DNA of 64,000 nucleotides from Haliotis cracherodii (lineage: Eukaryota). The first letter of the stretch is position 1. Every line of letters starts with the position of its first letter. The position numbers and the translations under genes were made by a program. The notes beneath the pieces are model-generated. The model was not told the origin of the DNA, made no database searches, and saw nothing but the letters and a program-made list of their open reading frames with translations. Of this stretch, positions 114-33,908 are shown in pieces. The DNA lies in the NCBI RefSeq assembly GCF_022045235.1, contig NW_027266283.1, forward strand, positions 2,604,001 through 2,668,000, read 5' to 3'.

Positions 114-1275
114 CTCTTGTGCCACCAGCTCCAGGTTTGCCATCGACTGAAGCAGACATATTCCCGCTGTGGTTATCACCTGTGGCAATATTACCTATAT
201 TACCTTGGTTTGTGATTTGACGACTTCCTGTAATGTAACATGTACATATTATTACATATTGGGGTTGAATATAAATTACTTTTAATACTTGTTAGTATTT
301 TACAACGAATGCATTGACCAAAGTTTCATTTATAAACACATGCTTGTGGTCTTCCCGAAACCGTTCATTAAGCTTTGTATTTTAGCCGATAATTCTTACT
401 GTTGCTTTTATTTATTATAATTCAATATTCAAAGCATGAATGGGAATACATTTTCAGCAGTCGACTAAATTTTGGGGACGACAGAGTCCTGGGACTTCTC
501 TACAGCCGATTGTGACGAAGCAAATGATTTCAATGTACATTGTGACGACATGATAGCAGCTTGTGTAATAGAGCTAAACCTTTTAAGAGCTTGTATTTAG
601 AGGAATTCACTTTGTGTTGACTTAACACGTAGCAATGCGTGTCGTAAATGCCACTTGAGGATAACGAATACTAAAGTATATGTTGTGAGACATTAAATCG
701 TCTGTTGTGGCACCCATCCCTCATCACAAAGCCATGTTGACGGTCACAAAATTCAGGATGACAATGAAGAAAATATTTTTGTTCGGACTGGTATATCTAG
801 TTAGGCCAATGATTATTATTCGAAAATGGCCATCTTCCGTCATATGCTCATGTGTTTAATGGAAAATAATTGTGAAAACAGGATGCCGAAATGATGGTTG
901 ACGGACAAAAGCTCTCCTTAAACACTATGTTTTGTTCCTCATTTTATCAGTTAATAACGATATACCCATAACAATTAATTCCTAATGAATATATGTCATG
1001 TTTTTTTAATCACATTAAACTGCAATATATATGGTATGAACCGGGGTTGTTGAAAAACATATTCAATGGATATTTCAATGAACACAACATAGTGATAAAA
1101 ATACACAATACACTTAAACCTATTTGATTAATTGTGAATCATTTTTGAGTTGACTACCTTGGTTATGGCTGGTAGTGACGCTATTGCCCATCCCGCCGTG
1201 GACAACACCAGCGACATTGGACTTTTCCACCGTGCCGCCTGCAACTCCCGTGACTTTGATATCATACTTTGACAT
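114..1275 (-). CDS. G1: motif-alpha + motif-beta(B) gene, 3'-partial (SAM exon presumably left of the window)
   Basis: Exons 1275-1158 (MSKYDIKVTGVAGGTVEKSNVAGVVHGGMGNSVTTSHNQ, donor G|gtagtc) and 227-114 (GSRQITNQGNIGNIATGDNHSGNMSASVDGKPGAGGTR, cag|...G|gtaag); both introns phase 1. The paralogous copy G3 continues into a SAM exon. Probable non-coding exon with donor at 1523. Confidence 0.8.
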
Positions 1276-1599
1276 TTTGTATTCTGAATAAGCAAGGATA
1301 AACAGACATGATGAGCAATATGACTTCACAAGTACAGAACAGGCGACAACATTTCAACATGGTTCTATCATGGGTTTTTTTATTGTCGAACTTTATTGCA
1401 CTTTTGACAAACTGGATCAGAAATACACATACTGGGCTACGACCAAGTGTCGTAAAGCCATTGGATTAGTTTAAACTTTAAAAAAACCCACAGATCTGTG
1501 TAAGACAAGAAAGTTAACCTACCTTGCTGCTGAAGGGCTCTTCATGCAATGAGCCTCGCTGTCACCTTCCCGTCATTACATATTAACATATTGACATGG

Positions 1600-1650
1600 A
1601 TCTATATATAACCTCTTTCCTGGAAAATACCTTCCGTAAATGACGCAACG
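1600..1650 (-). promoter_or_regulatory. Candidate core promoter of MSKYD-type genes: TATA + GAS/STAT site + CRE/ATF-like site
   Basis: TATATATA at ~1603-1610, TTCCTGGAA (TTCN3GAA) at 1617-1625 and TGACGCAA at 1641-1648, about 80-125 bp upstream of the conserved donor at 1523. Related arrangements at ~17525-17572, ~24830-24880 and ~27135-27185. Confidence 0.4.
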
Positions 1651-4512: not shown

Positions 4513-5457
4513 TTATTTTGGAAGAAATTTCTTCAGATTCAGTATTTTCTTCCTTTCAAATGAGTCGTCAATGCCAAAGTCTCCAAGTTCATCCTCGTTG
4601 AGCTGAGACGACAAATCCCCATCAATGCCATGTTTCTTGAATAGTTGAATGTGTTTCTCCAGCTTCTTATTTTGTAGGAGACCAATAATTTCGTCCTCGG
4701 TGATGTCTGAAAGAGCTGTAAATGCAAGCTTTATAGTAAGTATTTTCAATATTAAACGTCACAATTCACATGTTGCGTCGCGTGGAAGCTATCATGTTTG
4801 TTTCAAGGTTACATAGTAAAACAGTATTTCACTTTAGGGTCGGTTAAATTTAATAGTTTATCCGTTATCTATAGACAAATTATGAGAAGTAAACATGATT
4901 CTTTTGTTTAGTTAAAATAAATACGTGTACAGAAGTTCGTTTTGAAAACGTTGGAACCTTTCAGCAAAGTTATGTACATAGCTCATCATATTTCGGCTTC
5001 CTGGTATTGATCCTGGAATGATAGATCAGCCATTTCACATTACAAAGCGGATTAACAGTAGTTTTACCTTTTCCTTTGAAGAATGCAGTGGGTCCTGATC
5101 TTTGCCCTGTGTTTTTTTCTCCTTGATCCACAGTGGCGCGTCGCATGTCCTGCCCACCTACGACGCCGTGGGCATTTTCAATATTATATGTTTGCTGCCT
5201 GTTTTCTGGAATGAAATGTTATGATCAATTTTTGGAGATAGAAAAACATATTTTTTTCTAAATCATCAAATCTAATGATGTTACGTTTAGATTGTTTCAT
5301 TAGATGCATGGCCAAACATATATATATGGGAGGATGTGTTTAAGCGCATTCATAAACTCACCAATAGATTCCATCTGACCTTGATTAATGCCGGCAACCA
5401 CAGAGTTGTCTACGTGAGCATCTCCCGTGACACCCTTCACGTCCATGTTGCTAATAC
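4513..5457 (-). CDS. G2: motif-alpha + motif-beta(A) + SAM(A); first exon not located
   Basis: Exons 5457-5362 (ISNMDVKGVTGDAHVDNSVVAGINQGQMESI), 5205-5068 (ENRQQTYNIENAHGVVGGQDMRRATVDQGEKNTGQRSGPTAFFKGK) and 4715-4513 (ALSDITEDEIIGLLQNKKLEKHIQLFKKHGIDGDLSSQLNEDELGDFGIDDSFERKKILNLKKFLPK*). All GT-AG, phase 1, open. SAM signature F..HGIDG..L..L...EL..FGI...ERKKIL. In-frame ATG at 5446. Confidence 0.8.
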
Positions 5458-9179: not shown

Positions 9180-10080
9180 TCACTGGATGAGGTCCTCCTT
9201 TAAACGCCGAAGCTTCCTTTGTTCTATCTTGCTGTTAATCCCCAGTTCGTCAAGAAGTTCATCATCTAGGTCCATGAACAATCGCCCGTCAACATTATGT
9301 GTCTCAAAACTCTTAATAGTGTCCTCAGTGCAGTGGCGCTCCCTCAGAAGGTTTATCAGTGTTCCTGGGGTGAGTGCTCTAGGATCTGTTCAAGGTGAAT
9401 CATGTCGATTACAGATATGTCTCTCGATGTCACAAGTATTATCATGAGTACATTATATTCATTAGAAACCATTTACCTAAAGGTTTTAAAACAAACCGTT
9501 TTGACAAACACACCGTTGAATACCCACAATAGTACTCGCATAAGGATATATATCTTATATACCATGGGTTTATAAAAGCAAACGTGTTACAATAGAATTC
9601 GAGAAAAGGTCAACAGTGTAAAATGTCAAAATAATGTATACATGAATTTCGGCTGTAATACAATAGAGATCTGTCCTGTAGACCCGTGAAGGTCCGGGGT
9701 AGAATAGGCCTTCAGCAACCCATGCTTGCCATAAAAGGCGACTATGTTGTCGTTAGAGGCGACTAACGGGATCGGGTAGTCAGGCTCGCTGACTTGGTTG
9801 ATGCATGTCATAGCATCCAAATTTCGTGGATCTATGCTCATGATGTCAATCACTGGATTGTCTGGTCCAGACTCGATTATTTACAGACCGCCGTCATATA
9901 GCTGGAATATTGCTGAGTGCGGCGTTAAACAACAAACAATTAAGATCCGTCCTTGACAAGCCTTACCTCTTGTGTCACCAGCTCCAGGTTGGACACCGAC
10001 TGAAGCAGCCATATTCCCGCTGTGGTTATCACCTGTGGCAATATTACCTATATTACCTTGGTTTGTGATTTGACGACTTC
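9180..10080 (-). pseudogene. G3: motif-beta(B) + SAM(B); first coding exon and promoter deleted
   Basis: Exons 10080-9967 (GSRQITNQGNIGNIATGDNHSGNMAASVGVQPGAGDTR) and 9385-9180 (DPRALTPGTLINLLRERHCTEDTIKSFETHNVDGRLFMDLDDELLDELGINSKIEQRKLRRLKEDLIQ*); the SAM exon is absent from the ORF track. Both are open and phase 1. At ~11030 the sequence jumps from the equivalent of ~1149 to ~2395, removing the MSKYD exon. Confidence 0.75.
9680..9940 (+). mobile_element. SINE family 1 (long copy); the equivalent copy in the first duplicate ends at 1-90
   Basis: gacccgtgaaggtccggggtagaata...gctggaatattgctgagtgcggcgttaaacaacaaac. Confidence 0.85.
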
Positions 10081-11101
10081 CTGAATGTAAAATGTACATA
10101 TTATTACATTTTGGGATTGAATATAAATCACTTATAATACTTGTATGCATTTTACAACGAATGCATTGACCAAAGTTTGATTTATAAACACATGCTTGTG
10201 GTCTTCCCGGAATTGTACATTGAGCTCTGTATTTTTTAGCCGATATTTCTTCTTGTTGCTTTTGTTTATTATAATTTAATGTTCAAAACATGAAAGGGAA
10301 TACGTTTTTAGCAGAAAACACATTAGTGGTCGACTAAGTTTTGTGGGCAACATAGAGCTGGGACTTCTCTACAGCCGATTGTGACGAAGCAAATGCTTTC
10401 AATGAGCGTTGTGACGACATGATGGTAGCTTGTGTAATAGAGCTAAACCATTCAAGGCCTGCTGAATTTTATTTAGAGGTATTCACTTTGTGTTGACTTA
10501 ACACGTAGCAATGCGTGTCGTAAATGCCACTTGAGGATAACGAATACTAAAGTATATGTTGTGAGACATTAAATCGTCTGTTGGGGCACCCGTCCCTCAT
10601 CACAAGGCCATGTTGACGGTCACAAAATTCAGGATGACAATGAAGAAAATATGTTTGTTCGGACTGGTATATCTTGTTAGGCCAATGATTATTATTCGAT
10701 AATGGCCATCTTCCGTCATATGATTATGTGTTTAATGGAAAATAATTGTGAAAACCGGATGCCGAAATGATGGTTGACTGACTATAGCTCTCCTTAAACA
10801 GTATGTTTTGTTCCTCATTAAATCAGTTAAAAACGATATTCCCATTACAATTAATTCCTAAAAAATGAATATATGTCATGTTTTTTAATCACATTAAACT
10901 GCAATATATATGTTACGAACCGGGGTTGTTGAAAAACATATTCAATGGATATTTCAATGAACACAACATTGTGATACAAATACACAATACACTTAAAACT
11001 ATTTTATTAACCGTGAATCTTTTTTGAGGATTCTAACACTCCTGGTGTGTAGAAGGGGCGACGATTAGTAATGATGGCCCAACCGAAAAAAGGACGTCAA
11101 A

Positions 11102-12552
11102 GTCAAAGTCAAAGATATTTATTGCATGTAAGGCCTCCGGCCCATATACAAGAGAGTTACAAACAAGTAGTGTACATATTTGGATATATGCTCATGTTTA
11201 ACAATTTGTTTCTTCTGAGGGAAATTGCATTTTTAACATATATAGCCAGTTTTAATATGACAGCATCATCTTTTGAAGAAAGAAGAGAAATAAAAGCAGG
11301 TACAGGATAATTTGACAGATAACTTTCTGGTATAAACTTTCCTCTTAGGTCACAATAATAAGGACAGACAAAAGTAACATGAATTTCATTTTCTATAGCT
11401 GAATGACATAATGGGCCCAGCCTCTTTGACTTTTCAGTGGACATTTTATTCCTTCATTTATCATGAGATCTAACAATACGAGCCTAAATTGAATAAATGG
11501 ACGTCGAAGGGTTGTTGATGTTAATGTTGAATAAGACTCTTAAACGTTCTGTACAAGTCATACCTTGAACTATTTTCTAGAGTAGAATGCCAATCCTGAT
11601 AAAACATTTATAGATTGTTCACGAAATTGTTTCAAAAAGAGTTTAACATCACCAATTGTTTGGTTTTACCATACAAATCCATAGCCATAAGAAAACAAAA
11701 GGATTTTGATATGTGATGCCCATGTTACTTTGCCCATGTCGTCGAAAAGTACAAGCATATTATAAGCAAGTTTGGGGATTCGGCGTTCATGCATTCCAAA
11801 AATATTAAATGAGTATTTCAAGCATCTAATTTGGGAGTTGATATATATCGGGTCTCTGCCACATTCGCCATAGACCATACAATAGCGTGTTGATAAGAAA
11901 GTTTTACAGTCTAAAAGATGTAGCTTTTCAAGACAATCGTATCGCTGAAATCCCCATACTTCTGATCCATAAAACAGGATTGGTTGAATTTGGGCATCAA
12001 ATAATTTAAAAATGTAAAAGTGTACAATCTCCTACTTTCTGCGAGACAGACATTACTCTTCACTGAGGCCTTCTTTGCACGTGATGTTAAGAGCGAGACA
12101 CTTTTCTTGAAGTTCATTGTATGGGTAAACATTACGCCAAGATATGTATGGTGGCTCAGAAGATTAACACATTTACCATTCAGTGACACCTCACCCCCTC
12201 TTCTGAAAATGACAATGTTTGTTTTATCATGGTTAATTGATAGTTTCCACTCTTTGGAATAAAATTCTAAAATATTAAATTGTTTTTGTAATCCAACAAC
12301 AGAATCTGACAATAAATTTCATCATCGGCAAAAAAGAGGCATCGAAATATCTATAACATTTGGGAACAATTGAAGACCATGTTCACCCTTAGCCATAATT
12401 TCATAATATAATTCACTAATATCAAAATGAGAACAATATCGGGCTCAAGATACAGCCTTGTCGTAAGCCAACAGGACAAAGAAAATCGGTTACATCGGCA
12501 CCACATCGTACACATGATTTGATATTTGAATACATAGCTTTTAATATAGAGT
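11102..12552 (-). mobile_element. 5'-truncated, decayed non-LTR retrotransposon (RT + C-terminal Cys/His motif; clade uncertain, RTE-X/CR1-group-like)
   Basis: RT motifs CPVGLRQGCILSPILFS, LFADD.....DSVVGLQKQ and YLGVMF; C-terminal LCHSAIENEIHVTFVCPYY; 3' AATAAA plus (TTTGAC)n tail. acgtcaaa duplicated at 11094-11101 and 12553-12560; empty site at ~2454-2461. Confidence 0.9.
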
Positions 12553-18187: not shown

Positions 18188-18429
18188 CTCAGTCGTCTTA
18201 GTCGCCGTTATTCACTGTGCAGAGTTGCGTCCCTTGGGCACGCCAGAAAGCTATGGTTGTGGGTTTGAATCCCCGTTCGCCCCAATTATGTTTCTAGGTT
18301 TGTCAGCACCGTACCCGTGCTCGTGGGTTTCACCGAAGTGGTAAACGTCTGAGACATTAAGCTGACACGCTGTGATATAACTGGAATACTGTTGAAAGCG
18401 GCGTTAAGCCCAACTCACTCACTCACTCA
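18188..18429 (+). mobile_element. SINE family 2 (duplicated at 27799-28040)
   Basis: Same body and (CACT)n tail as 13844-14125. Confidence 0.8.
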
Positions 18430-18727
18430 GTTGAAGTACTAATGAATGAATGCTAATGGGAACGGGGATAGTATGATTGTTGTTTACTTATTCACAGAAC
18501 TTTCATGTTCCATATAACAACACTGTTTTTAGATCTAATATTTATTGTGTAATGATGGATGATAGCATGAGGCAATGCAAAATCTACTCTTCAAATGATA
18601 AACAAAGAGTATGTTGATCCAACTACAGTGAGAAGCCTTTTGATAGTTCATAATGGCATTTATAGCATTGACAAGGATAATCTATTACATATGATCTTTT
18701 AACAGTCGAGATGGTTGAGCGAATATA

Positions 18728-20172: not shown

Positions 20173-20282
20173 TGTTTAACCTGTAATATAACAGATCCTT
20201 CGGATTATGACCACAGTGGTGTACCATTTACAGACAGTTCTCAAACCTCGTTTATCCCAAAGTCGACTTGTCCTGTAAGAAG

Positions 20283-20540
20283 AGACCCGTGAAGATCCGG
20301 GGTAGAATAGGTCTTCAGCAACCCATGCTTGCCGTAAAAGGCGACTATGCTTGTCGTAGGAGGCGACTAACGGGATCGGGTGGACTCGCTGACTTAGTTG
20401 ATGCATGTCATCGATCCCAATTGTGTGGATCGATGCTCATCCATCACTGGATTGTCTGGTCGAGACTCGATTATTTACAGACCGCCGTCATATAACTGGA
20501 ATATTGCTGAGTGCGGCGTAAAACAACCAGCCAACCAACT
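20283..20540 (+). mobile_element. SINE family 1 (duplicated at 29891-30152)
   Basis: Homologous to 9680-9940. Confidence 0.85.
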
Positions 20541-21479
20541 GTAAGAAGGTGAAACTTCGTGTCCCCACACCAGACCTGATAACAGTGGTGCTTGACATAC
20601 AGGCTACAGATGCCGTGTATCGTAAGGCCCCAGGATTTGTGTCATTGGACGTTTTGAAGTGGTTGTGCTTGGTTGTGTTGAAGTTACATGTTCAATAAAA
20701 GCAGAATGTCCATAAACGACTTTTTAATCCGTAAAATATTTGTTAAATATACCAAACTGCATACTCTGATGACATTACAATTGAACATTAACAATTAGTG
20801 TTTGTGTGATTGGGATAATTCCAACATTTCAACTACATCGGTTATAATATGTTCTTACACTGTACTGAGTTTCAAATCCTTAATAAAAGCCTCCTCATTT
20901 AATTACTTTGAATAATTGCTCATGAAATAAAGTATTACCTTTGTGTGGACGAATATCATGAACGTCTGGTTTCTTTGTAGGTTTAGCGATGTGACAGTTT
21001 TCTATAGTGTTGACTTTATTGATTTCTTATGACATGGACTTATTTTTATTTCCATGACGTGGATCTACTTTTCTCAGGGAACGCCCATGTCATTTCTCGT
21101 AAAATATTTCCAACACCAACTCCAAAATTAGATTTTCCATTTCGGACAGGTTACCACTCGCATTGACTATCAACGCTTTTGAAATTTGATCAGTTGCCAA
21201 CAAATGTACATGCAGAAAAAAATCTGTTGGTGACAGGGATCTAATTTTAGTGTCCTGTGCGAAACGATTTTCAGAATGTAAAAATTGGGTCAAATGTTTG
21301 ACTGGTGAGTGAGTGAGTGAGTGGGTGGGTTGTGTCGGTCGATTGAGAGAGTGAGTGAGTGATGTTACGGTTGCCTGAAGACAATAGTGTCCCGGAAATC
21401 ATGAGAAACGATCCATGCTAACGGTGACCCGCATGCACCAAGCCCCGTCACATCGTCTGACCGGGTTATAATTGCTCTT

Positions 21480-21700
21480 TAGCAAGCCATGCTTGTCTTA
21501 GGGAGCACCTATTCTTGCAAGAAGCGACTAACGGTATCGGGTGGTCATGTTCGCTGACTTGGTTAATGCAGGTTATTGCTCAGATCGATGTTCATGATGT
21601 CAATCAATGGATTGTCTGGTCCACCTGATTATTTGCAGACCGTCGTCATATAGCTGTGATATTTCTGAGTGCGGCATTAAGCAACAAACAAATAAATAAT
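21480..21700 (+). mobile_element. SINE family 1, diverged (duplicated at ~31090-31310; partial copy 23170-23298)
   Basis: gcgactaacggtatcgggtggtca...gagtgcggcattaagcaacaaac. Confidence 0.75.
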
Positions 21701-22085
21701 GGACAAACCCTTCACATTAACACACTTGAAATAAAATAAAGCCTTAAGCGCGGACCTACCTGGAGGCCTGTTGTAACAACAAAAAACAAACAAACACAGA
21801 GCCGGATCAATCTATCCCAAATTAAATCCGCAATCATGCTTGAAAACACAACAGTGATGCATACATTGAAGTAAATAGATATTATTTATTTAAAATATGA
21901 GTCGATGAAAATCAGGTAACGAATATGTACTTTGATTAAAACAATTAATCGTTTGATGTCATGAATGACAGTTGATAACACTGAAGCCACAAAGATTGTC
22001 ATCGTTCATGGTCCATGTCATGTCGTGAGATGGTGAAGGATGAAGCATAGTGGACCCGAATGATAGGCGAACATCAATGGGGCAG

Positions 22086-23423
22086 TCAACTAGATTTCTT
22101 GGAACGATTTTCGAGAATTGTGTTTATCTTCATTTTATCTAGGGGTGACGTGACACCGAGCGCTTCCAAAACGCCCTCTTCTAAAAGTTTCACAAAGTAT
22201 TTGCCGTCAATGCCATTTTCCTCAAATGTTTTTCTCGTGGGTCCAGGAAAACGCTCTCTGGTCATCAGATCCTGAACATCTTCAACCGTCTTCAGCTCCA
22301 AGGCTGGACCTGGAACCGTGGTAAACAGTACATGTTACCATATGATTCGACATGTGTGTTAAATCATATATACGTTAAACAACATCCTGGTTTAGAGATA
22401 TACCCCTTATGCCGGATAACAATACATATATGTACATGAACTAACCGACAAAAGACAAGTGAAAACCATCGATGGTGGTTAAAACATGAAAAACTACTCA
22501 TATTCAAGAGATATGAGATTGGTTCCATGCACAAACGAACATACTTGTATATCGTGAAGAGCCGGGGTAGAATAGCTCTTCGGCAACCCATGCTTGCAGC
22601 GACTATGCTTGTCGTAAAAGGCGACTAACGGGATCGGGTGGTCAGGCTCGCTCAGGGAACGCCCATGTCATTTCTCGGAAAATATTTCCAACAACAACTC
22701 CAAAATTAGATTTTGGACAGGCTACCACTCGCATTGACTGTCAACACTTTTGAAATTTGATCAGTAGCCAACAAATGTACATGCAGAATTTTTGTTGTTG
22801 GTGACAATGATCTAATTTAAGTGCGAAACGATTTTCAGAATGTAAAAATTGGGTCAAGTGTTAGATAACAAAGCCAGGTGACGTTTTTTTTCAAATCAAA
22901 AGGTCTAATGATGATGCACGTGGTACGTCACTCACGTACACATATTCAGTCATAGTTTCACGTTTGACATGTCCTTGCATGTGTTTGTGACGGGAAGGCT
23001 CATCTTTTTGCGATCACCTAAAATTCATTCGGGGACATGACTGGTGAGTGAGTGAGTGAGTGGCTGGGTTGTGTGGGTGGATTGAGTGAGTGAGTGAGTC
23101 ATGTTACGGTTGCCTGCAGACAATACTGTCCCAGAAATCATCGTCACATCGCCTCACCGGGATACAATTGCTCTTCAGCAACCCATGTTTGCCTTTGGGA
23201 GCAACTACTCTTGGAAGAAGTGACTAACGGGGTCGGGTGGTCAGGCTTGCCCAATTGCGTGGATCTATGAACATGATATCGATCACTGGATTGTTTGGAC
23301 AAGCCTTACCTCTTGTGCCACCAGCTTCAGGTTGGACACCGCATGAAGCAACCATGTTCCCGCTGTGGTTATCACCTGTGGCAATATTACCTATATTACC
23401 TTGGTTTGTAATTTGTCGATTTC
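22086..23423 (-). pseudogene. G6: patchwork of motif-beta(B) exon + SAM(D) exon, own first coding exon lost (may be used by G7)
   Basis: Exons 23423-23310 (GNRQITNQGNIGNIATGDNHSGNMVASCGVQPEAGGTR) and 22309-22086 (GPALELKTVEDVQDLMTRERFPGPTRKTFEENGIDGKYFVKLLEEGVLEALGVTSPLDKMKINTILENRSKKSS*), both intact. Only the donor remnant of the MSKYD exon survives at ~24296-24300. Confidence 0.65.
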
Positions 23424-24300
23424 CTGGAATGTAAAATGTACATACTATTACATATTGGGATTGAATATAAATTACTGTCAATACTTGTAAGTATTTTACA
23501 ACGAATGAGCTCTGTAGTTCTTAGCAGATATTTCTTCTTGTTGCTTTTGTTTATTATAATTTTATATTCAATGCATGAAAGGGAATACATTTTCGGCAGA
23601 AAACACATTAGAAGTCGACTAAGTTTTGGGGAAAACAGAGAGCTGGGACTTCTCTACAGCGGATTGCGACGAAGCAAATGTTTTCAATGTGCATTGTGAC
23701 TACATTTCTGTGGCTTGTGCAATAGAGCTTAACCTTTCAAGGCCTGCTAAATTGTATTTAGACGTACTCACTTTGCGTTAACAAGTAGCAATGCGTGTCG
23801 TAAATGCGACTTCAGGATAACAAATACTAAAGTACATGTTGTGAGACATTAAATCGTCTGTTCTTGTACTCCAACTCTCATCACAAGGCCATGTTGACGG
23901 TCACAAAAGTATAGGATGAAAATGAAGAAAATATTTTTGTACATACTGGTATACATCTAGTTAGGACAATGATTATTATTCGATAATGACCATCTTCCGT
24001 CATATGATTATGTGTTTAATGGAAAATAATTGTGAATACCGGGTGCCAAAATTATGGTTGAAGGACTATTATGTTTTGTTCCTCGTTAAATCAGTTAATA
24101 ATTATATACCAATAACGATTTATTCATAAATAATGAATAAATATCATGGGTTTTTTTCTTCACATTAAAGTGTAATATATAGTCGGTGTTATTGAAAACA
24201 GTATTTAATGGACATTTCAATTAACACAACATTGTAATAAAAATGCAGAATACACTAAACCTATTTTATTAGTCGTGAATATTTTTTACGTTGACTACCT

Positions 24301-24678
24301 ACGAAACTTTGCATGTCTATCAGACTCATGCTGAACTGGTGCCTTTTGATATTTAGCACTTTGAGTATTTTATTGTTTATGTTTCCATGACAACAGGTTG
24401 GACTTAGGTTCTATTATAGGGTGGGTTCACTTATGGAGTATAACAAATAAACTGTTAAATATTTCCTTGCCAAACATTGCATGTCTATATATAAAGCACA
24501 TACTGAACTGGTGCCATTTGATATTAAGGAGTTTTAGAAATGTATATTTTAGAATTTCCTTTACAGCTATTTTGACATGGGCTTAGAGAAATGTTGGGTC
24601 ATTTACCTGGTTTGGGACCATAACGTGTTAAAATAGGCGGGGGATATAGATGACTTCGTCGACTATACGCTTGTTTCT
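24301..24678. mobile_element. Inserted repeat (possibly a non-autonomous Helitron/Helentron-type element) replacing the MSKYD exon
   Basis: Absent from G1 at the same position; has an internal imperfect tandem repeat (gcatgtctat...ctgaactggtgcc.tttgatatt) and a ggcggggga...cttgtt end. Confidence 0.45.
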
Positions 24679-25352
24679 TATAATATCAAAGCCGTTGGAT
24701 TAGTTTTAAACTTAAAAAACACAGATCTGTGTATGACAAGAACGTTAACCTACCTTGCTTCTGAAGGGCTCTTCATGCAATGAGCCTCGCTATCACCTAC
24801 CCGGTATTACATATTAACATATTGACATGGATCTATTTATAACAACTTTCCTGGAGAATTCCTTCCGTAAATGACCAACGAGATGAAACGCAACGCAAAT
24901 GAGATGATTGTTGTTGTTTTCTTCTTCTCAGATAAAAGCCCAAACCCACACGTTATGTCAAGTTGAAGCTCTCTGATGGTTTTCATGTTACACAATGAAA
25001 CAGTATGTCACTGTGGCGCTGGTTAAAAAATATTGTTTATCAGTTTTCTTATAAACGATTTAGGAGAAGCGTGTTTCTTTAAGATCTGTGTTTCTGTATT
25101 AATAGCATTCCGTCTCAGGAGCATCTATGAATACATTTTGAAGGATACGTATTTATATTGCAGAAGTAAAGATTCATTTTCATATTCATAGTTAAAATAA
25201 ATACGGGTGCAGAATTTCGTTTTGGAAAGGTTTGAGCTTTTCCGCAAAGATCATAGCTTATCATATTTCGGCTATCAATGAAGTATTGATCCCAGAATGA
25301 TAGATCAGCTGTTCAAAGTTTCATGTAACACAGATGATTAACAGTAATTTAC

Positions 25353-26792
25353 CTTTTCCTTCGAAGTATGCAATGGGTCCTGATCTTGGCCCTGTGATTC
25401 CTCCTTGATTCACAGATGCGCCCCGCATGTCCTGCCCACCTACGACGCCTTGGGCATTTTCAATATTGTATGTTTGCTGCCTGTTTTCTGGAATAAAATG
25501 TTAATGATGATTAGATCAATTTGTGGAGATAGGAAACCAATTCAGTTAATTGTTAAATTCGATATCAAATTAGATTATGTTTCTTGATTTTATTTGCTAC
25601 ATGTGATGGATGCAAGGCCAACCATATTAGCCTCGTCATGTGGGAGGATGGGTTCCAGCGAATCGCTATCCTCATTTAATCTTTATTATTTGTTTGGTCA
25701 CTGCAACTAACACATTGACCAATTGCTGATTCATAGTTTTAAAGAGACCTCTTATCAATATGGAAAGGGTTTATAAGGGTTTGTATATAATTTATAATTA
25801 TTCAATATTCAGAATATGTTGCAATACCTTTTTAGCCGAAAACACGAGAACAATGGACTAATTAAGATTTAGGGACAACAAAGAGCTAGACTCTGGCTCC
25901 CTTCTTTCAACTACTGTCACGTAATAAGTGCAAAGCAATGAGAGCTGCTATGACATAATAATGACGCTTGCTATAGAACCAAATCTTTCAAGGCGTTCTT
26001 AATTGTCTTAAACCAGAAACCTATGATTTGTGGGTTCGAATCCCGGTTCGCCCGGATTATGTTTCTAGGTTTGTCAGCACCATACCCGTGACCGTGGGTT
26101 TCACCGAACAAATCTTTCAAGGCGTTCTTAATTGTCTTAAAAGGTGCTACACACTGTCAGTGCAACTTGAGTATAATGATGTTTTAAAATTATGTTTGAG
26201 CACACGCAAATGTCCAGGGCCATATTTCTTTTAAAGACAACTATGGGTGTTTCATTTATTCAGATCGAAAAGAAGCTCAAGACATAGGACCCCTAACATA
26301 GTATTTTCCCAAACAAACAAAGTGATCCCGTTTATTTTATGTATTGTAGAAAGGAGATAAGCGTACAGTGTTCGTAATGCTGGCAATGTTACCCATGTTA
26401 TGCTGTATATCCTTTTCCAAGTTCAATTTAGCCCTGTTAAAACAGTATTCTTGTCTTCTATTTAAATCCAATAAATAACGAAATATTCTTGCCGAATTAT
26501 GTATATACGTCTTTTCTTTTACCACATTAATGTATGACATTTCTTATGAATCTGTGTTTTTTTAATTATTTGAATCTTTAAAAGGAACATTTCAAAATAT
26601 GACATCGAAATGAACAGCAATGGGATATAACCACAGGACACTTAAGTCTATTTTACAAATCTCTTTCAGTTGACTACCTTGGTTGTGGTTGGTAGTGGAG
26701 GTATTACCCATCCCGCCGTGGACGATACCAGCCATATTAGACGTTTCTGTTGTGCCTTCACCTCCCTTCATTGTGATATCATACTTTGACAT
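25353..26792 (-). CDS. G7: copy of G4 whose SAM(A) exon is deleted
   Basis: Exons 26792-26678 (MSKYDITMKGGEGTTETSNMAGIVHGGMGNTSTTNHNQ) and 25487-25353 (ENRQQTYNIENAQGVVGGQDMRGASVNQGGITGPRSGPIAYFEGK), intact. At ~24931 the intron is fused directly to 3'-flank sequence (equivalent of ~14850 joined to ~15322). Confidence 0.65.
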
Positions 26793-28338
26793 TTTGTAAT
26801 CTGAATAAAAAAAGATAAACAACTATGATATGCAATATAACTGCCCAAAATTGCAACAGGTTTCTCTCGTGGTTTTTCATCTTCTAACTGTTGTGTCCTT
26901 TTGACAAACTGGACAACAAACAAACAAATTAGATTACGAACTGTGTCTACATGGTGGCTATATACAAGCGGAAGACATGCTTTTTCTTATTTATTCTCAT
27001 CCGTTGGTGGGTTTAATCTTTAATAACACAGAGCTGTGTATGACAAGGAAGTCAACCTACCTTGAAACTGAAGGGCCCTTCGCGTTATGAGCCTCGCTAT
27101 CATTCCCAGTATAACATGTTAACATACTGACATGGATATATTTATAGCCATATTTCTCGGGAATACGTTCCTTAAATGACACAAGGTTATGAATAGCATG
27201 ACAGGAAGACAACTCAAGCTTTCCGTCTGATGAGGTATTATCACCATATAACACCATGTTTTACGTTACAAATAGGTCATAGATATCTAGGCTGATGTCA
27301 GGCAGAAAGAGCAGGGTTGTGTATCGCTAGTGTCAACTTACGGATTTATATTGAATAGCAAACGTTTCGGTTTTACTATGAATGAACTGTATACCCATTG
27401 GACGACCCATATTGATGCGGTCTGTTCATCTGATGTGTGCTCATGATGTAATATGCAATTATAAAATTTCAATGCAAAAAAATGCACCCCTGATTATCCA
27501 CCGAAAAAGATTTTGCCTAAAGGGCAAAATAGCTGTGAAGCTTATATGAATGGACCATTTAAAATCAGTGATGTGACACCAGGCGTTTGCGAAAAGTGTA
27601 AGTATGTCCTGCCCCACCAGTAGCATTCATTATTATAAAATGCTTCATTTTCAGCATGACGTTTTCGCATTCTACAAATTTCATTTTCTACAGATAGTCA
27701 TTCTTCAGTTGAAGTAGGGGGGTACAGGGGGCAGTAGTCTAAGGAGTCATGATATGGCTGAAATATTGCCGATGTGACTTTAAATTTCAACTCACTCCCT
27801 CAGTCGTCTTAGTCGCCGTTATTCACTGTGCAGAGTTGCGTCCCTTGGGCACGCCAGAAAGCTATGGTTGTGGGTTTGAATCCCCGTTCGCCCCAATTAT
27901 GTTTCTAGGTTTGTCAGCACCGTACCCGTGCTCGTGGGTTTCACCGAAGTGGTAAACGTCTGAGACATTAAGCTGACACGCTGTGATATAACTGGAATAC
28001 TGTTGAAAGCGGCGTTAAGCCCAACTCACTCACTCACTCAGTTGAAGTACTAATGAATGAATGCTAATGGGAACGGGGATAGTATGATTGTTGTTTACTT
28101 ATTCACAGAACTTTCATGTTCCATATAACAACACTGTTTTTAGATCTAATATTTATTGTGTAATGATGGATGATAGCATGAGGCAATGCAAAATCTACTC
28201 TTCAAATGATAAACAAAGAGTATGTTGATCCAACTACAGTGAGAAGCCTTTTGATAGTTCATAATGACATTGATAGCATTGACAAGGATAATCTATTACA
28301 TATGATCTTTTAACAGTCGAGATGGTTGAGCGAATATA

Positions 28339-29780
28339 TTATTGAGGAAGATATTTCTTCAGATTCAGTATTTTCTTCCTTTCAAACGAGTCGTCAATCC
28401 CAAAGTTTGCTTTGAGTTCATCCTCGTTGAGCTGAGACAATAAATCCCCATCAATGCCATGTTTCTCGAACAGTGGAATGTGTTTTTCTAGCTTCTTCTC
28501 CCGTAAGAGACCAACAATGTCCTCCTCAGAGATGTCCGAACGAGCTGGAATGCAAACGGAGTCGTAAATATATTTCATAATAAAAGCCAAAACCCAAAGG
28601 TTACGTCACGTTGAAGCCTTACTGATGGTTTCAATGTTACACAGTGTTATCAGTTATTTTTAAACAATTTATGATAAGCATATTTCCTTAAGATCAGTGA
28701 TTCTGTATTAATACTACTCCGTCTCAGGAGCATCTATGAATACTTTTTGAAGGACACTTATTTGTAGTGTAGAAAAGATTAATTTTCGCTTGTACATAAT
28801 TTCGTTTTAGAAACGTTGGAGCCTTTCAGCAAAGATATGTACATAGCTAATCATATTTCGGTTCCCAATGAAGTATTGATCCCGGAATGAAATATCAGCG
28901 GTTCAAAGATTCATATAACACAGCAGATTAACAGAAATGTTATAATTACCTTTGCCTTTGAAGTATCCAATGGGTCCTGATTTTTGCCCTGTGATTCCTC
29001 CTTGATCCACAGATGCGCCTCGCATGTCCTGCCCACCTACGACGCCTTGTGCATTTCCAATATTGTATGTGTGCTGCCTGTTTTCTGGAATGAATTATTA
29101 CTGATATCGATGATGATTTCAATGTGTGGAGATAAAAAACCGATTGAGTCAATTGTCTAATTCAAATGGTATTACGTTTCTTGATTTTATTGATACTTGG
29201 ATGAAAGACCAACCATATTAACATGGTAATGTATAAGGATCTGTTCCAGCGAATCCATAAACTCACCAATAGATCCCATTTGGCCGTTATTAATGCCGTT
29301 GACGACAGAATTTTCAACCTCAGCATTACCCTTGGCACCCGTCACCTCCATGCTGCTTACATCTGGTGAATATATGAAATATTACTTATGCATACATGAT
29401 TAACCTTCTATAAGATTATAATAATAGTAATACTTAAAAATGAAAAAAAGTCCTTTTCCATAATCATATCATGAGCTGACACAATCAAATGCTTCGGGGG
29501 CGGTCGGGTAGCCTAGTGGTTAAAGCGTTCGCTCGTCACGCCGAAGACCCAGCTACGAACTGGCTATGTAGGAGAGCCAGACTTTAGCATAACAACTTGT
29601 CCATATACAGTGTATGTGTTATTCAATTGTTTGTTATTTTAAGCGACTACATCAAACGATAAATAAACAATTCATACCTTTCTGTGGTGGCAGTTTTCCG
29701 TTACTGTTTTGAATCCCAGTAACGCTTGAGTTCTTTATTTTTGCGTTTCCGTCTGCCCCTGTCACGGTAATTGTGGCCAT
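28339..29780 (-). CDS. G8: near-identical copy of G5, 179 aa
   Basis: Exons 29780-29678, 29362-29267, 29084-28950 and 28544-28339. Two synonymous changes in the alpha exons, Q>H and H>Q in the beta exon, SAM protein identical. Confidence 0.88.
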
Positions 29781-31706
29781 TGTTTAACCTGTAATATAAC
29801 AGATCCTTCAGATTATGACCACAGTGGTGTACCATTTACAGACAGTTCTCAAACTTCGTTTATCCCAAAGTCGACTTGTCCTGTAAGAAGAGACCCGTGA
29901 AGATCCGGGGTACAATAGGTCTTCAGCAACCCATGCTTGCCGTAAAAGGCGACTATGCTTGTCGTAGGAGGCGACTAACGGGATCGGGTGGACTCGCTGA
30001 CTTAGTTGATGCATGTCATCGATCCCAATTGTGTGGATCGATGCTCATGATACCCATCACTGGATTGTCTGGTCGAGACTCGATTATTTACAGACCGCCG
30101 TCATATAACTGGAATATTGCTGAGTGCGGCGTAAAACAACCAGCCAACCAACTGTAAGAAGGTGAAACTTCGTGTCCCCACACCAGACCTGATAACAGTG
30201 GTGCTTGACATACAGGCTACAGATGCCGTGTATCGTAAGGCCCCAGGATTTGTGTCATTGGACGTTTTGAAGTGGTTGTGCTTGGTTGTGTTGAAGTTAC
30301 ATGTTCAATAAAAGCAGAATGTCCATAAACGACTTTTTAATCCGTAAAATATTTGTTAAATATACCAAACTGCATACTCTGATGACATTACAATTGAACA
30401 TTAACAATTAGTGTTTTTGTGATTTGGATAATTCCAACATTTCAACTACATCGGTTATAATATGTTCTTACACTGTACTGAGTTTCAAATCCTTAATAAA
30501 AGCCTCCTCATTTAATTACTTTGAATAATTGCTCATGAAATAAAGTATTACCTTTGTGTGGACGAATATCATGAACGTCTGGTTTCTTTGTAGGTTTAGC
30601 GATGTGACAGTTTTCTATAGTGTTGACTTTATTGATTTCTTATGACATGGACTTATTTTTATTTCCATGACGTGGATCTACTTTTCTCAGGGAACGCCCA
30701 TGTCATTTCTCGTAAAATATTTCCAACACCAACTCCAAAATTAGATTTTCCATTTCGGACAGGTTACCACTCGCATTGACTATCAACGCTTTTGAAATTT
30801 GATCAGTTGCCAACAAATGTACATGCAGAAAAAAATCTGTTGGTGACAAGGATCTAATTTTAGTGTCCTGTGCGAAACGATTTTCAGAATGTAAAAATTG
30901 GGTCAAGTGTTTGACTGGTGAGTGAGTGAGTGGGTGGGTTGTGTCGGTCGATTGAGAGAGTGAGTGAGTGATGTTACGGTTGCCTGAAGACAATAGTGTC
31001 CCGGAAATCATGACAAACGACCCATGCTAACGGTGACCCGCATGCACCAAGCCCCGTCACATCGTCTGACCGGGTTATAATTGCTCTTTAGCAAGCCATG
31101 CTTGTCTTAGGGAGCACCTATTCTTGCAAGAAGCGACTAACGGGATCGGGTTGTCATGTTCGCTGACTTGGTTGATGCAGGTCATTGCTCAGATCGATGT
31201 TCATGATGTCAATCAATGGATTGTCTGGTCCACCTGATTATTTGCAGACCGTCGTCATATAGCTGTGATATTTCTGAGTGCGGCATTAAGCAACAAACAA
31301 ATAAATAATGGGCAAACCCTTCACAGTAACACACTTGAAATAAAATAAAGCCTTAAGCGCGGACCTACCTGGAGGCCTGTTGTAACAACAAACAAACAAA
31401 CAAACAAACAAACACAGAGCCGGATCAATCTATCCCAAATTAATTCCGCAATCACGCTTGAAAACACAACAGTGATGCATACATTGAAGTAAATAGATAA
31501 TATTTATTTGATAAAATATGAGTCGATGAAAATCAGGTAACGAATATGTACTTTGATTAAAACAATTAATCGTTTGATGTCATGAATGACAGTTGATAAC
31601 ACTAAAGCGGCAACAATTGTCATCGTCCATGGTCCATGTCATGTCGTGAGATGGTCAAGGATGAAGCATAGTGGACCCGAATGATAGGCGAACATCAATG
31701 GGGCAG

Positions 31707-33908
31707 TCAACTAGATTTCTTGGAACGATTTTCGAGAATTGTTTTTATCTTCATTTTAGCAAGGGGTGACGTGACACCGAGCTCTTCCAAAACGCCCTCT
31801 TCTAAAAGTTTCACAAAGTATTTGCCGTCAATGCCATTTTCCTCAAATGTTTTTCTCGTGGGTCCAGGAAAACGCTCTCTGGTCATCAGATCCTGAACAT
31901 CTTCAACCGTCATCAGCTCCAAGGCTGGACCTGGAACCGTGGTAAACTGTACATATTACCATATGATTCGGCATGTGTGTTAAATCATATATACGTTAAA
32001 CAACATTCTGGTTTAGAGATATACCCCTTCATATATGGGTGGACACAATTTTATGGATAACAGTTTCTTTGATACTGTAAAAAGCGACGTTTCGGTTCAG
32101 ATCATTATACCGTTGACAAGCAAGACTGAATACGGGACATGTACAGAATATATATAGTAGGTGTACTGTGTACTATATATACTACTATATATATGTACCA
32201 TGTCCCCCATTCAGTCTTGCTTTACAACGGTATAAGGATCTATACTGAAACGTCGCTTTTTACAGTATTGAAGTTGTTATCTATAACATTGTGTCTACCT
32301 CATCATCCGTCAACTTCTAAGTAATGCCTATCAAACAATTAATACATATATGTACATAAACACACCGACAAAAGACACGTGAAAACCATAGATGTTGGTT
32401 AATACATGAAGAACTACTCATATTCAAGAGATATGAGATTGGTTCCGTGCACAAACCAACAAACTGGTATACTCAGTCTGTATAAACCTACTCTCATGAA
32501 CGTCACATGTGACGCCATAGATCCGTGACTCGAGCTGCACTTTTTGTCTCGTGCAGGATTAGCGTGTTAAGTTTGGAAATCATGTGCACCATATTGTGAT
32601 GAGAATAAAGACACGGTGGTAACTTGTTTGATAGGCATTACAACGGTGGTAACATTTGACAGGTTGTTACTTTTGTCATTAAACGGTACACATTGGAAAC
32701 ATCTCTTCTCAAGGTACATACTTCTCTATATCTTTCTTGGTTCGCGTTTCTTTTGACGGTGAGTATATATGCAATGTCTGTCTATATATGCAATGGTGGC
32801 CCAGTCGTATAAGGCGCCGCGATTCGCTGTGCAGAGTTGCGTCCCTTGAGCACGCCAGAAAGCTATGATTGTGGTTCGAATCCCGGTTCATCCCGATTAT
32901 TTTTCTAGCTTTGTCAGCACCATACCCGTGCTCATGGGTTTCATCGAAGTGGTTAACGTCATATACCTGCATTCCTTCGAGCTTTCCTCCAACATAAAGC
33001 TGACACGCCGTGATATAACTGGAATACTGTTCAAAGCGGCGTTAAACTTTGTAGAACGGACGCCTGAATTCTAAAGGTGGGCCGTGTATGGTATTAAATT
33101 AATATGCGTCAACATTTGACTTGTTTGAAGTAGTATTCTGTTAAACTCAAAAGGATTATGTTGTGGATCGTGTAGATGTCTCCCCATTCATACACGACAG
33201 TTAAATTCTATAAAACGTTATAAATGGCGAGTAATAAATAAAATACTAAACTTGCTCCCGTTTAATACCAATTTTATGAAACTCGCTTCCGCTCTTCAAA
33301 TACAAGAACTATTCACTCGTTTCATAAAACTGGTATTACACGGGAGCTCGTTTAGTATTCTATATGTTCTCTAAACCTAGATAAATATGTGAGCCCTACT
33401 TTGAGATGTAGTTTGTGACGCTGGTTGTTGTGATGGGCTGCTGCTGCTGCTGCCAATGTTGACCTTGTCTCCTGTGACCTCGTTGACGGTCGTCACTCCA
33501 GTGCTGCCGCTCACGTTGTTGTGGTATGTCTTTTCCACTGAACAAATTTACACACATTTACACATATTGCAAGTACTCCCCCCAAGCAACAGTGTAACAT
33601 TAGCCTATACTGAAATCAATTCAATCGTTCAAATAATGTTTCTTTCCATATTTACTCAGATGAGTGCGGCATATACATTGTTTCCATTGGTGACCTAGCC
33701 TCTGTATTGTTCTATATCATATTTAATACGAAAGTGTCAATCTTTAACAAAAAATGCATTTACGAAAATAGTTACCTTTGTGTTGCGGCCCGTGATAGAT
33801 GTTGCCCATCCCCCCTTCAACCACCGCAGCCACATTGCTGTGAGTAGCCTGCCCTCCAGACATCCCCGTTAATTTTATAGATCCCGGTAGTCTCTCCATC
33901 TTCTTCAT
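31707..33908 (-). CDS. G9: motif-alpha + motif-beta(D) + SAM(D), complete, 164 aa
   Basis: Exons 33908-33776 (MKKMERLPGSIKLTGMSGGQATHSNVAAVVEGGMGNIYHGPQHK), 33537-33400 (VEKTYHNNVSGSTGVTTVNEVTGDKVNIGSSSSSPSQQPASQTTSQ) and 31930-31707 (SPALELMTVEDVQDLMTRERFPGPTRKTFEENGIDGKYFVKLLEEGVLEELGVTSPLAKMKIKTILENRSKKSS*). 495 nt, phase-1 GT-AG introns. Confidence 0.85.
32030..32340. mobile_element. Foldback insertion with Penelope-like terminal-repeat arms
   Basis: Inverted arms ~32040-32140 and ~32199-32296 containing cttg(a)caacggtataa...gaaacgtcg; absent from the paralogous intron at ~22408. Confidence 0.6.
32794..33047 (+). mobile_element. SINE family 2
   Basis: tggtggcccagtcgtataaggcgccgc...aaagcggcgttaaac. 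Confidence 0.85.
33243..33360. repeat. Hairpin/MITE-like inverted repeat
   Basis: atactaaacttgctcccgtttaataccaattttatgaaac ... gtttcataaaactggtattacacgggagctcgtttagtat. Confidence 0.7.

What the first reader, a model, noticed from the sequence alone, without database searches (positions are those of the whole stretch)
114..33908. All coding introns are phase 1 and the motif and SAM cassettes are combinatorially shuffled
Every internal exon is symmetric 1-1 (96, 114, 135 or 138 nt) and carries one motif. Observed combinations: MSKYD-alpha+betaB (G1), betaB+SAM-B (G3), MSKYD-alpha+betaA+SAM-A (G4), alpha+alpha+betaA+SAM-A (G5/G8), alpha+betaD+SAM-D (G9) and betaB next to SAM-D (G6). Any intronic recombination therefore yields an in-frame protein. 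Inference: the locus is a mix-and-match generator of adaptor specificities.
Basis: partly seen in the sequence, partly recalled or inferred. Interest (0 to 1): 0.78.

Follow-up and report, generated by a model that had tools for sequence, protein, structure and literature searches.

The report
Abalone SAM gene cluster with swappable exons
A 42-kb tandem cluster of small, abalone-only genes joins short glycine/asparagine-rich motif exons to a SAM domain exon, and because every coding intron sits in the same phase, duplications and deletions have reshuffled these exons in frame, which is a clean but conventional case of exon shuffling and not a dedicated generator.

Summary
The window is Haliotis cracherodii, contig C20. 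The structural observation holds. I defined 25 minus-strand coding exons. All 18 donors are GT and all leave one base (phase 1). All 19 acceptors are AG. All 12 internal exons are 96, 114, 135 or 138 nt. Public RefSeq models match G1, G2, G4, G8 and a flanking G0 exon for exon.

Three of the six listed combinations are not distinct architectures:
- G1 is cut by the window edge; it is MSKYD-betaB-SAM-B.
- G3 is the same type, with its 5' end replaced by a LINE fragment.
- G6 lacks a start exon.

Beta type and SAM type stay paired in 8 of 9 units. Real module exchange exists:
- One 5' module serves both A and B classes.
- A 7.1-kb duplication ends in an intron.
- G2/G4/G5 identities are mosaic.
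- SAM-A sequences group by species lineage, not by architecture (AU p = 3e-5).
- Other Haliotis species have different combinations.

Best reading: a birth-and-death tandem family reshuffled by unequal recombination, gene conversion and transposon damage. A programmed generator is not shown. Function is unknown: a SAM domain plus N-terminal modules predicted to be disordered. The alpha motif also occurs in other abalone genes. Earlier notes of this scan cover this same stretch.

The parts
33776..33899 (-). G9 start exon (alpha9 motif), ATG at 33899, phase-1 GT donor
   Evidence: The alpha9-to-betaD junction is also present in the H. rubra and H. asinina models P0002 and P0060.
33400..33537 (-). 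G9 betaD exon, 138 nt, phase 1-1
   Evidence: It is the only strong copy in the genome.
31707..31930 (-). G9 SAM-D terminal exon
   Evidence: SAM_1 19.7 bits, below the cut-off. There are two copies in the genome.
29678..29780 (-). G8 start exon (alpha1)
   Evidence: P0055
29267..29362 (-). G8 alpha2 exon, 96 nt
28950..29084 (-). G8 betaA exon, 135 nt
28339..28544 (-). G8 SAM-A terminal exon
26678..26792 (-). G7 MSKYD start exon (coding part). An RNA-like contig places the exon start at 26802.
25353..25487 (-). G7 betaA exon, 135 nt. G7 has no SAM exon after it.
   Evidence: The betaA translation is identical to that of H. rufescens P0048.
24887..24932 (-). Deletion junction. Homology to G4 stops 35 bp before where the SAM-A acceptor would be, and it resumes with sequence that lies about 230 bp past the SAM-A stop in G2 and G4.
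24688..24886 (-). G6 upstream region with a putative non-coding first exon. It is 89% identical to window 1454-1656 upstream of G1.
   Evidence: The donor at 24753/24752 was read by eye.
24300..24687 (-). High-copy repeat lying where the MSKYD exon of G6 should be. Homology to the G1 intron starts exactly at the donor position, 24300.
   Evidence: Contig depth here is hundreds to thousands of times that of neighbouring bins in run X22 (table 2).
23310..23423 (-). G6 betaB exon, 114 nt
22086..22309 (-). G6 SAM-D terminal exon (95% amino-acid identity to the G9 copy)
20070..20172 (-). G5 start exon (alpha1)
19656..19751 (-). G5 alpha2 exon, 96 nt
19339..19473 (-). G5 betaA exon, 135 nt
18728..18933 (-). 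G5 SAM-A terminal exon
17066..17180 (-). G4 MSKYD start exon
   Evidence: P0001
16062..16137 (-). Possible decayed relic of an alpha2 exon in G4 intron 1. Against the G5 exon it is 35 of 76 aligned bases identical, with 20 gap columns.
   Evidence: inconclusive
15740..15874 (-). G4 betaA exon, 135 nt
15084..15286 (-). G4 SAM-A terminal exon
11040..12540 (.). Dispersed repeat (a LINE-like, 5'-truncated element) that replaces the first exon and upstream region of G3
   Evidence: 609 first-look candidates, 40 scored, copies at 74-91% identity, most sharing one end; a weak RVT_1 match, E = 0.016, below the cut-off.
9967..10080 (-). G3 betaB exon, 114 nt
9180..9385 (-). G3 SAM-B terminal exon
5362..5457 (-). 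G2 alpha2 exon, 96 nt, with the start codon inside it
   Evidence: P0057
5068..5205 (-). G2 betaA exon, 138 nt
4513..4715 (-). G2 SAM-A terminal exon
1158..1275 (-). G1 MSKYD start exon
   Evidence: P0059
114..227 (-). G1 betaB exon, 114 nt. The SAM-B exon of G1 lies outside the window at G000:C20:2603343-2603540.
15322..22408 (.). Copy 1 of the recent segmental duplication (G4 5' part, G5, SAM-D of G6)
   Evidence: 97.6% over 7109 bp; identity is graded from 91.5% to 100%; a further 131 bp at 90.8% beyond a 300-bp insertion.
24932..32029 (.). Copy 2 of the recent segmental duplication (G7, G8, SAM-D of G9)

Best explanation
This is a Haliotis-restricted tandem cluster of ten units, G0-G9, spanning about 42 kb on H. 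cracherodii contig C20. Nine of the units lie in the window. The genes encode small proteins of 141-179 aa. Each has one to three N-terminal Gly/Ser/Asn/Val-rich motif cassettes, one per exon, followed by a C-terminal SAM domain on the last exon.

The units fall into three classes in which the beta cassette and the SAM subtype travel together: A is betaA+SAM-A, B is betaB+SAM-B and D is betaD+SAM-D. The 5' alpha module varies more freely.

All coding introns are phase 1, so any rearrangement with breakpoints in introns stays in frame. The cluster has evolved by unequal recombination and segmental duplication between paralogues, by gene conversion, and by exon loss linked to transposons or deletions. 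These events produced both new in-frame arrangements and damaged copies.

Shown here: the exon structure, the classes, the duplications, the mosaic identities, and the incongruence between SAM-A history and architecture.

Inferred: the recombination mechanisms. I also infer that the proteins are SAM-oligomerising scaffolds that display short, disordered interaction motifs.
For: Exon structure and phases. Exact RefSeq matches for G0, G1, G2, G4 and G8.

RNA-like contigs end at exon edges. There is a MSKYD-to-betaA joint. Loose ends run from betaA into the start of SAM-A and from betaB into the start of SAM-B.

The family is confined to Haliotis and to this locus. Of 47 hits to the SAM-A exon among 1.84 billion representatives, only 2 reach E below 1e-20, and both are Haliotis. 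In the genome, the SAM-A, SAM-B and SAM-D exons match only at C20:2596344-2635928, apart from one weak 44% SAM hit on C1.

Class pairing holds in 8 of 9 units.

Evidence of exchange:
- The G1 and G4 5' modules align at 69.6% over 815 bp, while their downstream exons belong to different classes.
- G4-to-G5 homology runs to within 12 bp of the alpha2 exon and then stops.
- G2-G4 identity is 96.4% in the 3'UTR, 89.2% in the SAM-A exon and 78.1% in the intron. For G4-G5 the same segments give 77.0%, 92.1% and 85.5%.
- The 7.1-kb duplication ends in the intron before SAM-D and in the last intron of G4/G7.
- The AU test rejects a clade of MSKYD-architecture genes on the SAM-A tree, p = 2.9e-5.
- Other species have other combinations: P0002, P0058 and P0060.

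The N-terminal modules are modelled as disordered, pLDDT about 30, while the SAM domain scores 86-91.
Against: Several 'combinations' are truncated or damaged copies (G3, G6, G7), and none of these matched a RefSeq model that I saw.

The models from other species are computational predictions. The long ones, P0058 and P0060, could be read-through mergers of neighbouring genes.

The runs laid are of unrecorded kind and from coded organisms. They differ from the window by about 3-10%, so they show splicing of the family but not of particular H. cracherodii copies.

The test for an a1a2-architecture clade was not rejected (p = 0.078).

The junctions of the duplication were not verified by reads.
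Confidence: 0.72

Rival explanations
1. Plain tandem duplication and decay. The classes never exchanged cassettes, and the apparent combinations are only truncated pseudogenes plus annotation mergers.
For: G3 lost its 5' end to a dispersed repeat. G6 lacks a start exon and G7 lacks a SAM exon. Beta and SAM types stay paired in 8 of 9 units. P0058 and P0060 might be read-through gene models.
Against: Intact, RefSeq-modelled genes of both classes carry the MSKYD 5' module: P0059 is class B and P0001 is class A. Identity among G2, G4 and G5 is mosaic. The AU test gives p = 2.9e-5. H. rubra P0002 joins alpha9-betaD to a SAM-A exon.
Confidence: 0.13
2. The locus is a regulated combinatorial system. 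Read-through transcription and alternative splicing across same-strand units, or cassette skipping, produce many motif/SAM combinations from one array.
For: All cassettes are 1-1 symmetric, so skipping or splicing across units stays in frame. H. rubra P0002 is named 'isoform X2' and lacks four cassettes that are present in the H. asinina model P0060. G7 and G6 abut within about 15 bp, and they could be read as MSKYD-betaA-betaB-SAM-D.
Against: Among the 15 joints listed (51 more were not shown) there is no joint from betaA to betaB or from betaB to SAM-D. The loose ends show the ordinary betaA-to-SAM-A and betaB-to-SAM-B splices. Each intact unit has its own start exon and its own terminal exon. 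No RefSeq model for a G7+G6 fusion appeared in a search that could have found one.
Confidence: 0.1
3. The recent 9.6-kb repeat, and with it the G6/G7 chimeric junctions, is a haplotype duplication or some other assembly artefact.
For: The central 3 kb of the two copies is 99-100% identical. I could not show any contig that spans the boundaries.
Against: There is no N run in 1-34000. A unique 2.5-kb spacer, 22409-24931, separates the copies. Identity falls to 91.5-94% at one end, which is not what two alleles would give. G5 and G8 differ in their betaA exons.
Confidence: 0.05

Closest known systems
Classical exon shuffling of 1-1 symmetric modules. The link between symmetric exons and intrinsically disordered regions is from Schad et al. 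2013, PMC3632108 (abstract read). The attribution of the 1-1 rule to Patthy is recalled, not looked up.
   Same: Every cassette is a 1-1 exon. The cassettes encode regions that are modelled as disordered. Tandem exon duplication occurs (alpha1/alpha2, and three alphas in P0058). Modules appear in different gene contexts.
   Different: Here the exchange is among paralogues of one young, genus-restricted tandem cluster. The cassettes are 31-45-residue Gly/Asn-rich motifs, not folded extracellular domains.
Oligomerising SAM domains of SARM1 / TIR-1 and ANKS6
   Same: These are the best solved-structure matches of the SAM-A region: SARM1 at E = 1.1e-4, ANKS6 at 1.4e-3 and TIR-1 at 5.3e-3. RefSeq names two members 'ankyrin repeat and SAM domain-containing protein 6-like'.
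   Different: There is no TIR, ARM or ankyrin part. The proteins are 141-179 aa with a single SAM domain. The similarity is weak, and oligomerisation is untested.
Amyloid signalling motifs (RHIM, cRHIM, fungal HET-s and PP motifs). Passages of the review PMC13506858 were read.
   Same: These are also short Gly/Asn/Val-rich motifs that sit at protein termini, are disordered in the monomer and are shared between otherwise unrelated proteins. The alpha motif is found in the SAM cluster, in the P0049-P0053 family and in first exons on contig C10.
   Different: No Pfam family, RHIM included, matched any motif exon at E up to 10. I did not see an I/V-Q-I/V-G core by eye. AlphaFold2 gave no beta structure. 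No fibril or partner data exist.
Variable-exon gene clusters (clustered protocadherins, UGT1A). These are named from recall.
   Same: A same-strand tandem array whose exons are all frame-compatible.
   Different: Those clusters share one set of constant exons. Here each intact unit has its own terminal SAM exon and its own start exon, and no splicing across units was seen.

Membership tests
SAM domain (Pfam SAM_1 PF00536 / SAM_2 PF07647) | Profile match above the curated gathering score | tested here: met
   SAM-A scores 31.6-45.5 bits on its better model in each of the three copies scanned, and SAM-B scores 30.5 bits on SAM_2; all are above the cut-offs of 23 and 20.5. The SAM-D exons score 18.5-20.3 bits, just below the cut-offs, so SAM-D on its own is inconclusive.
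Exon shuffling | Cassette exons symmetric in phase | tested here: met
   12 of 12 internal exons are 1-1, and 18 of 18 donors are phase 1.
Exon shuffling | The same module joined to different partners, with breakpoints in introns | tested here: met
   the MSKYD 5' module of G1 (class B) and G4 (class A) align at 69.6% over 815 bp, ending about 14 bp into the intron; a duplication boundary lies in the intron before SAM-D; other species have other combinations.
Exon shuffling | Different histories for different modules | tested here: met
   the AU test rejects the MSKYD-architecture clade on the SAM-A tree (p = 2.9e-5), while the a1a2 clade is not rejected (p = 0.078); identity among G2, G4 and G5 is mosaic. 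Gene conversion of the SAM exon would give the same signal as cassette exchange.
RHIM / amyloid signalling motif | Match to the RHIM profile or its I/V-Q-I/V-G core | tested here: not met
   0 families for 6 of 6 motif exons at E up to 10. I saw no such core by eye in the alignment.
Beta-solenoid repeat protein | Confident stacked beta-rung model | tested here: inconclusive
   AlphaFold2 gives pLDDT 29-39 for the N-terminal modules, with almost no strands; the ESM Atlas's own low-confidence model (pLDDT 0.57) resembles beta-helix adhesin heads at TM 0.49-0.64 scaled to the query.
Variable-exon cluster with shared constant exons | Splicing of alternative upstream exons to one common downstream exon set | tested here: inconclusive
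   none of the 15 listed joints crosses units, and 51 further joints were not shown. The data are contigs only, of unrecorded kind and from coded organisms.

The most novel reading that the evidence does not exclude
The ~25-residue alpha motif (roughly V-T-G-V-x-G-G-x-V-x-x-S-N-V-A-G-V-V-x-G-G-M-G-N) is a portable assembly motif specific to abalones. It would link SAM-oligomerising proteins of this cluster to other alpha-bearing proteins: the coiled-coil family P0049-P0053, which carries two tandem copies, and the genes on contig C10 that carry it in a phase-1 first exon. It would work by templated beta-structure or motif-motif binding. That would make this an undescribed mollusc signalling or scaffolding network, analogous to RHIM or HET-s systems. 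In-frame cassette exchange and read-through splicing in the cluster would diversify its connectivity.
Probability: 0.12. Interest if true: 0.75.

Novelty: new member of a known kind. Interest (0 to 1): 0.42.

Why it matters
The locus is a compact and unusually legible natural example of how uniform intron phase lets a young tandem gene family rearrange its coding cassettes. One 42-kb stretch shows intron-breakpoint duplication, gene conversion, transposon-caused exon loss and a possible gene fusion, and four Haliotis species are available for comparison.

The proteins are uncharacterised and confined to the genus. If the shared alpha motif proves to be an interaction or assembly element, the cluster would be an entry point to a mollusc-specific adaptor network. 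As it stands, the mechanism is conventional.

Tried and rejected
- **Pfam on the six motif exons:** no family at E up to 10, so there is no support for RHIM or any known repeat.
- **Alpha versus beta cassettes:** an alpha-motif HMM built from 20 instances recognised alpha1 (E = 6.4e-5). It scored the betaA, betaB and betaD exons no better than 50 shuffles of each. I therefore dropped the idea that beta cassettes are diverged alpha cassettes.
- **AlphaFold2:** two jobs, P0055 with 8 aligned rows and P0060 with 12 rows, left the N-terminal modules unstructured. The alignments are shallow, so this does not exclude folding on assembly.
- **ESM Atlas:** beta-helix look-alikes turned up only for a low-confidence model. 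Nothing was found for the 317-aa open frame next to the C10 alpha exon.
- **Pfam on neighbouring frames:** nothing usable on frames beside the other alpha-motif loci or on the P0049-family frames.
- **Alpha2 relic in G4:** 46% identity with 20 gap columns. This is too weak to claim.
- **Tree topology within the window:** it cannot show incongruence, because there are only three A-class lineages. I used segment identities and cross-species protein modules instead. Those trees rest on 44-66 columns, and most of their branches are weak.
- **Read laying:** it gave no evidence for or against the G7+G6 fusion or the duplication boundaries.
- **Literature:** three searches found no paper on this family. 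The abalone 'SAMD9' hit in PMC5405107 (passages read) is unrelated. Supplementary files were not consulted.
- **Spliced models:** I built and searched no joined model of my own. Exons were searched one at a time. The full-length proteins I used are public models returned by the tools.

Full report
**Where and what.**
The window is G000:C20:2604001-2668000 of a 1.18-Gb genome. A RefSeq protein of Haliotis cracherodii (black abalone) that equals one of the window's genes sits on a contig of the same length, 5,819,777 bases. The genome is therefore black abalone. All genes of the finding lie on the minus strand. There is no N run inside 1-34000. The N runs further right were left alone.

**Check of the observation.**
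- I located the exons by translated self-search, and a script then tabulated 25 coding exons.
- 18 of 18 donors are GT, 19 of 19 acceptors are AG, and every donor leaves exactly one base.
- The 12 internal exons are 96 nt (3), 114 nt (3), 135 nt (4) or 138 nt (2).
- The 16 complete introns measure 156-1469 nt.
- The terminal exons are SAM domains by Pfam. SAM-A and SAM-B score above the curated cut-offs. SAM-D scores just below them.
- The models are not only mine. Public RefSeq proteins returned by the searches contain the exon translations exactly:
  - G8 = P0055 (4 of 4 exons)
  - G4 = P0001 (3 of 3)
  - G2 = P0057 (3 of 3, with the start codon inside the alpha exon)
  - G1 = P0059
  - a further unit G0 just left of the window = P0061
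- Contigs of public runs laid on 21901-27000 add RNA-type support:
  - In run X8, contigs cover only exons and stop at the predicted edges.
  - One X1 contig skips the 1190-nt G7 intron.
  - Loose ends continue from betaA into the start of a SAM-A exon and from betaB into the start of a SAM-B exon.
- The kind of these runs is not on record and their organisms are coded. The contigs differ from the window by several per cent, so they speak for the family and not for particular copies.

**Corrections to the listed combinations.**
- G1 is not 'alpha+betaB'. Its SAM-B exon lies 460-660 bp beyond the window edge.
- G3 is a 91.7% copy of G1 from the SAM-B exon up to the first intron. Homology stops at the position of the MSKYD donor.
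- The next 1.5 kb of G3 is a dispersed repeat. The first look found 609 candidates and 40 were scored, at 74-91% identity, most sharing one end as 5'-truncated LINEs do. One frame gives a weak reverse-transcriptase match.
- G6 keeps an upstream region that is 89% identical to that of G1. A high-copy repeat lies where its MSKYD exon should be.
- G7 has lost its SAM-A exon by a clean deletion, and it abuts the G6 upstream region within about 15 bp.
- With G0 included, the beta type and the SAM type agree in 8 of 9 units that have both: A-A four times, B-B three times and D-D once. The one exception is G6.

**Evidence that cassettes have nevertheless been exchanged.**
1. The 5' module, meaning the upstream region plus the MSKYD exon, is shared by class B (G1) and class A (G4/G7) at 69.6% over 815 bp. 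The other class A genes carry alpha2, or alpha1 plus alpha2, instead. G4 stays homologous to G5 through the intron up to 12 bp from the alpha2 exon, where only a doubtful relic remains.
2. Identities are mosaic:

   | Pair | 3'UTR | SAM-A exon | intron |
   |---|---|---|---|
   | G2-G4 | 96.4% | 89.2% | 78.1% |
   | G4-G5 | 77.0% | 92.1% | 85.5% |

   A boundary of an older duplication or conversion tract therefore lies at the SAM-A exon. That older duplication is visible as 1-1149 = 9854-11028 at 90.7% and 2454-3992 = 12553-14069 at 93.5%.
3. A recent 7.1-kb duplication, 15322-22408 = 24932-32029 at 97.6%, ends in the last intron of G4/G7 and in the intron before SAM-D. This is what places a SAM-D copy behind the betaB exon of G6. 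Its identity is graded from 91.5% to 100%, which suggests later gene conversion.
4. On a tree of nine SAM-A peptides, sequences group by species lineage. H. asinina and H. rubra separate from H. cracherodii and H. rufescens with 99/99 support. The AU test rejects a clade of the three MSKYD-architecture genes (p = 2.9e-5). The clade of alpha1-alpha2 genes is not rejected (p = 0.078). Either cassette exchange or gene conversion of the SAM exon would give this result.
5. Other species carry other arrangements in their RefSeq models:
   - alpha9-betaD-SAM-A in H. rubra
   - alpha1-alpha2-alpha2-betaA-betaB-SAM-B in H. rufescens
   - a seven-cassette model in H. asinina

   These are computed models and may include read-through mergers.

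**What the proteins are.**
- The SAM-A exon finds only two close representatives among 1.84 billion proteins, and both are Haliotis. The remaining 45 hits are generic SAM proteins.
- In the genome the three SAM subtypes occur only in this locus, and betaA occurs only here.
- The closest solved structures are the SAM domains of SARM1, ANKS6 and TIR-1, at weak E-values.
- The N-terminal cassettes are rich in Gly 17%, Ser 11%, Val 10% and Asn 10%. They match no Pfam family, and AlphaFold2 models them as disordered. The ESM Atlas's own low-confidence model resembles beta-helix adhesin heads, so the fold is undecided.
- The alpha motif is conserved beyond this cluster:
  - It occurs twice in tandem in a second Haliotis-only family with a coiled-coil tail (P0049-P0053).
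  - It occurs in start exons on contig C10 and in an internal exon on C15. I read their donors as phase 1 by eye in the sequence printed.
- My working mechanism is therefore an inference. I propose SAM-mediated oligomers that display short, disordered, possibly self-associating motifs. No function has been tested.

**Comparison with what is known.**
Symmetric 1-1 exons as the currency of exon shuffling, and their link with disordered regions and internal tandem duplication, are established (PMC3632108, abstract read). This locus is a new, genus-restricted example. I do not see a new mechanism. Three full-text searches found no paper on the family. Earlier notes of this scan on the same stretch propose an amyloid-signalling reading and a G7+G6 fusion. 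I treated them as leads. The deletions behind the fusion idea are real, no fusion transcript was seen, and the amyloid reading failed the one profile test I could run.

**Verdict.**
The inference is half right.
- In-frame cassette exchange has happened repeatedly in evolution. The locus behaves as a birth-and-death tandem family with mostly fixed beta/SAM pairs and several damaged copies, and not as a demonstrated mix-and-match generator.
- I built and searched no joined spliced model. Exons were searched singly.

Noticed in passing
L008 (G000:C26:411000-418000), L009 (C6:3641500-3648500), L010 (C26:1192500-1199500): A second Haliotis-only protein family (P0049-P0053, 292-503 aa) carries two tandem alpha motifs. 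The motifs are followed by a conserved block and a Glu/Gln/Arg-rich coiled-coil tail. RefSeq names its members 'caldesmon-like', 'trichohyalin-like' or 'uncharacterized'. It has no Pfam match.
   Followed up: partly
L011 (G000:C10:17398000-17405000), L012 and L013 (C10:17648500-17655500 and 17671500-17678500), L014 (C15:10907500-10914500): Alpha-motif exons occur outside the cluster. Three are start exons and one is an internal exon, and I read their donors as phase 1 by eye. L012 and L013 are near-identical copies on opposite strands about 23 kb apart. The downstream open frames have no Pfam or Atlas match.
   Followed up: partly
window 1-96, 3767-3992, 9690-9940, 13844-14125, 18190-18429, 26013-26108, 32795-33047 and others: A very abundant SINE-like repeat. 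A search with the first 1500 bases gave 3268 first-look candidates genome-wide, and the scored copies of bases 1-90 are 95-98% identical. Copies sit in several introns of the cluster. One is shared at the same place behind the betaB exon in G1, G3 and G6.
   Followed up: partly
window 32034-32330: A roughly 300-bp insertion with inverted ends (MITE-like, judged by eye) lies in the G9 intron before SAM-D. It is absent from the G6 copy.
   Followed up: no
window 8617-8933 versus 8957-9253: A partial direct duplicate (82%) of the 3' part of the G3 SAM-B exon and its flank lies just downstream of the gene.
   Followed up: no
window 41054-42488, 44008-44488, 46078-46399, 57922-60071: Four minisatellite arrays: periods 18/93, 171, 55 and 47 nt. 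The last has 45.9 copies and a strong GC skew.
   Followed up: no
G000:C20:1748239-1748331: A lone betaB-like open frame (61% identity over 31 residues) lies about 850 kb from the cluster on the same contig.
   Followed up: no
window exon acceptors: The last 8 intron bases before the betaA exons, the betaB exon of G6 and three of the four SAM-A exons read alike (CATTCCAG). This hints that these cassettes and their intron ends share an origin.
   Followed up: no
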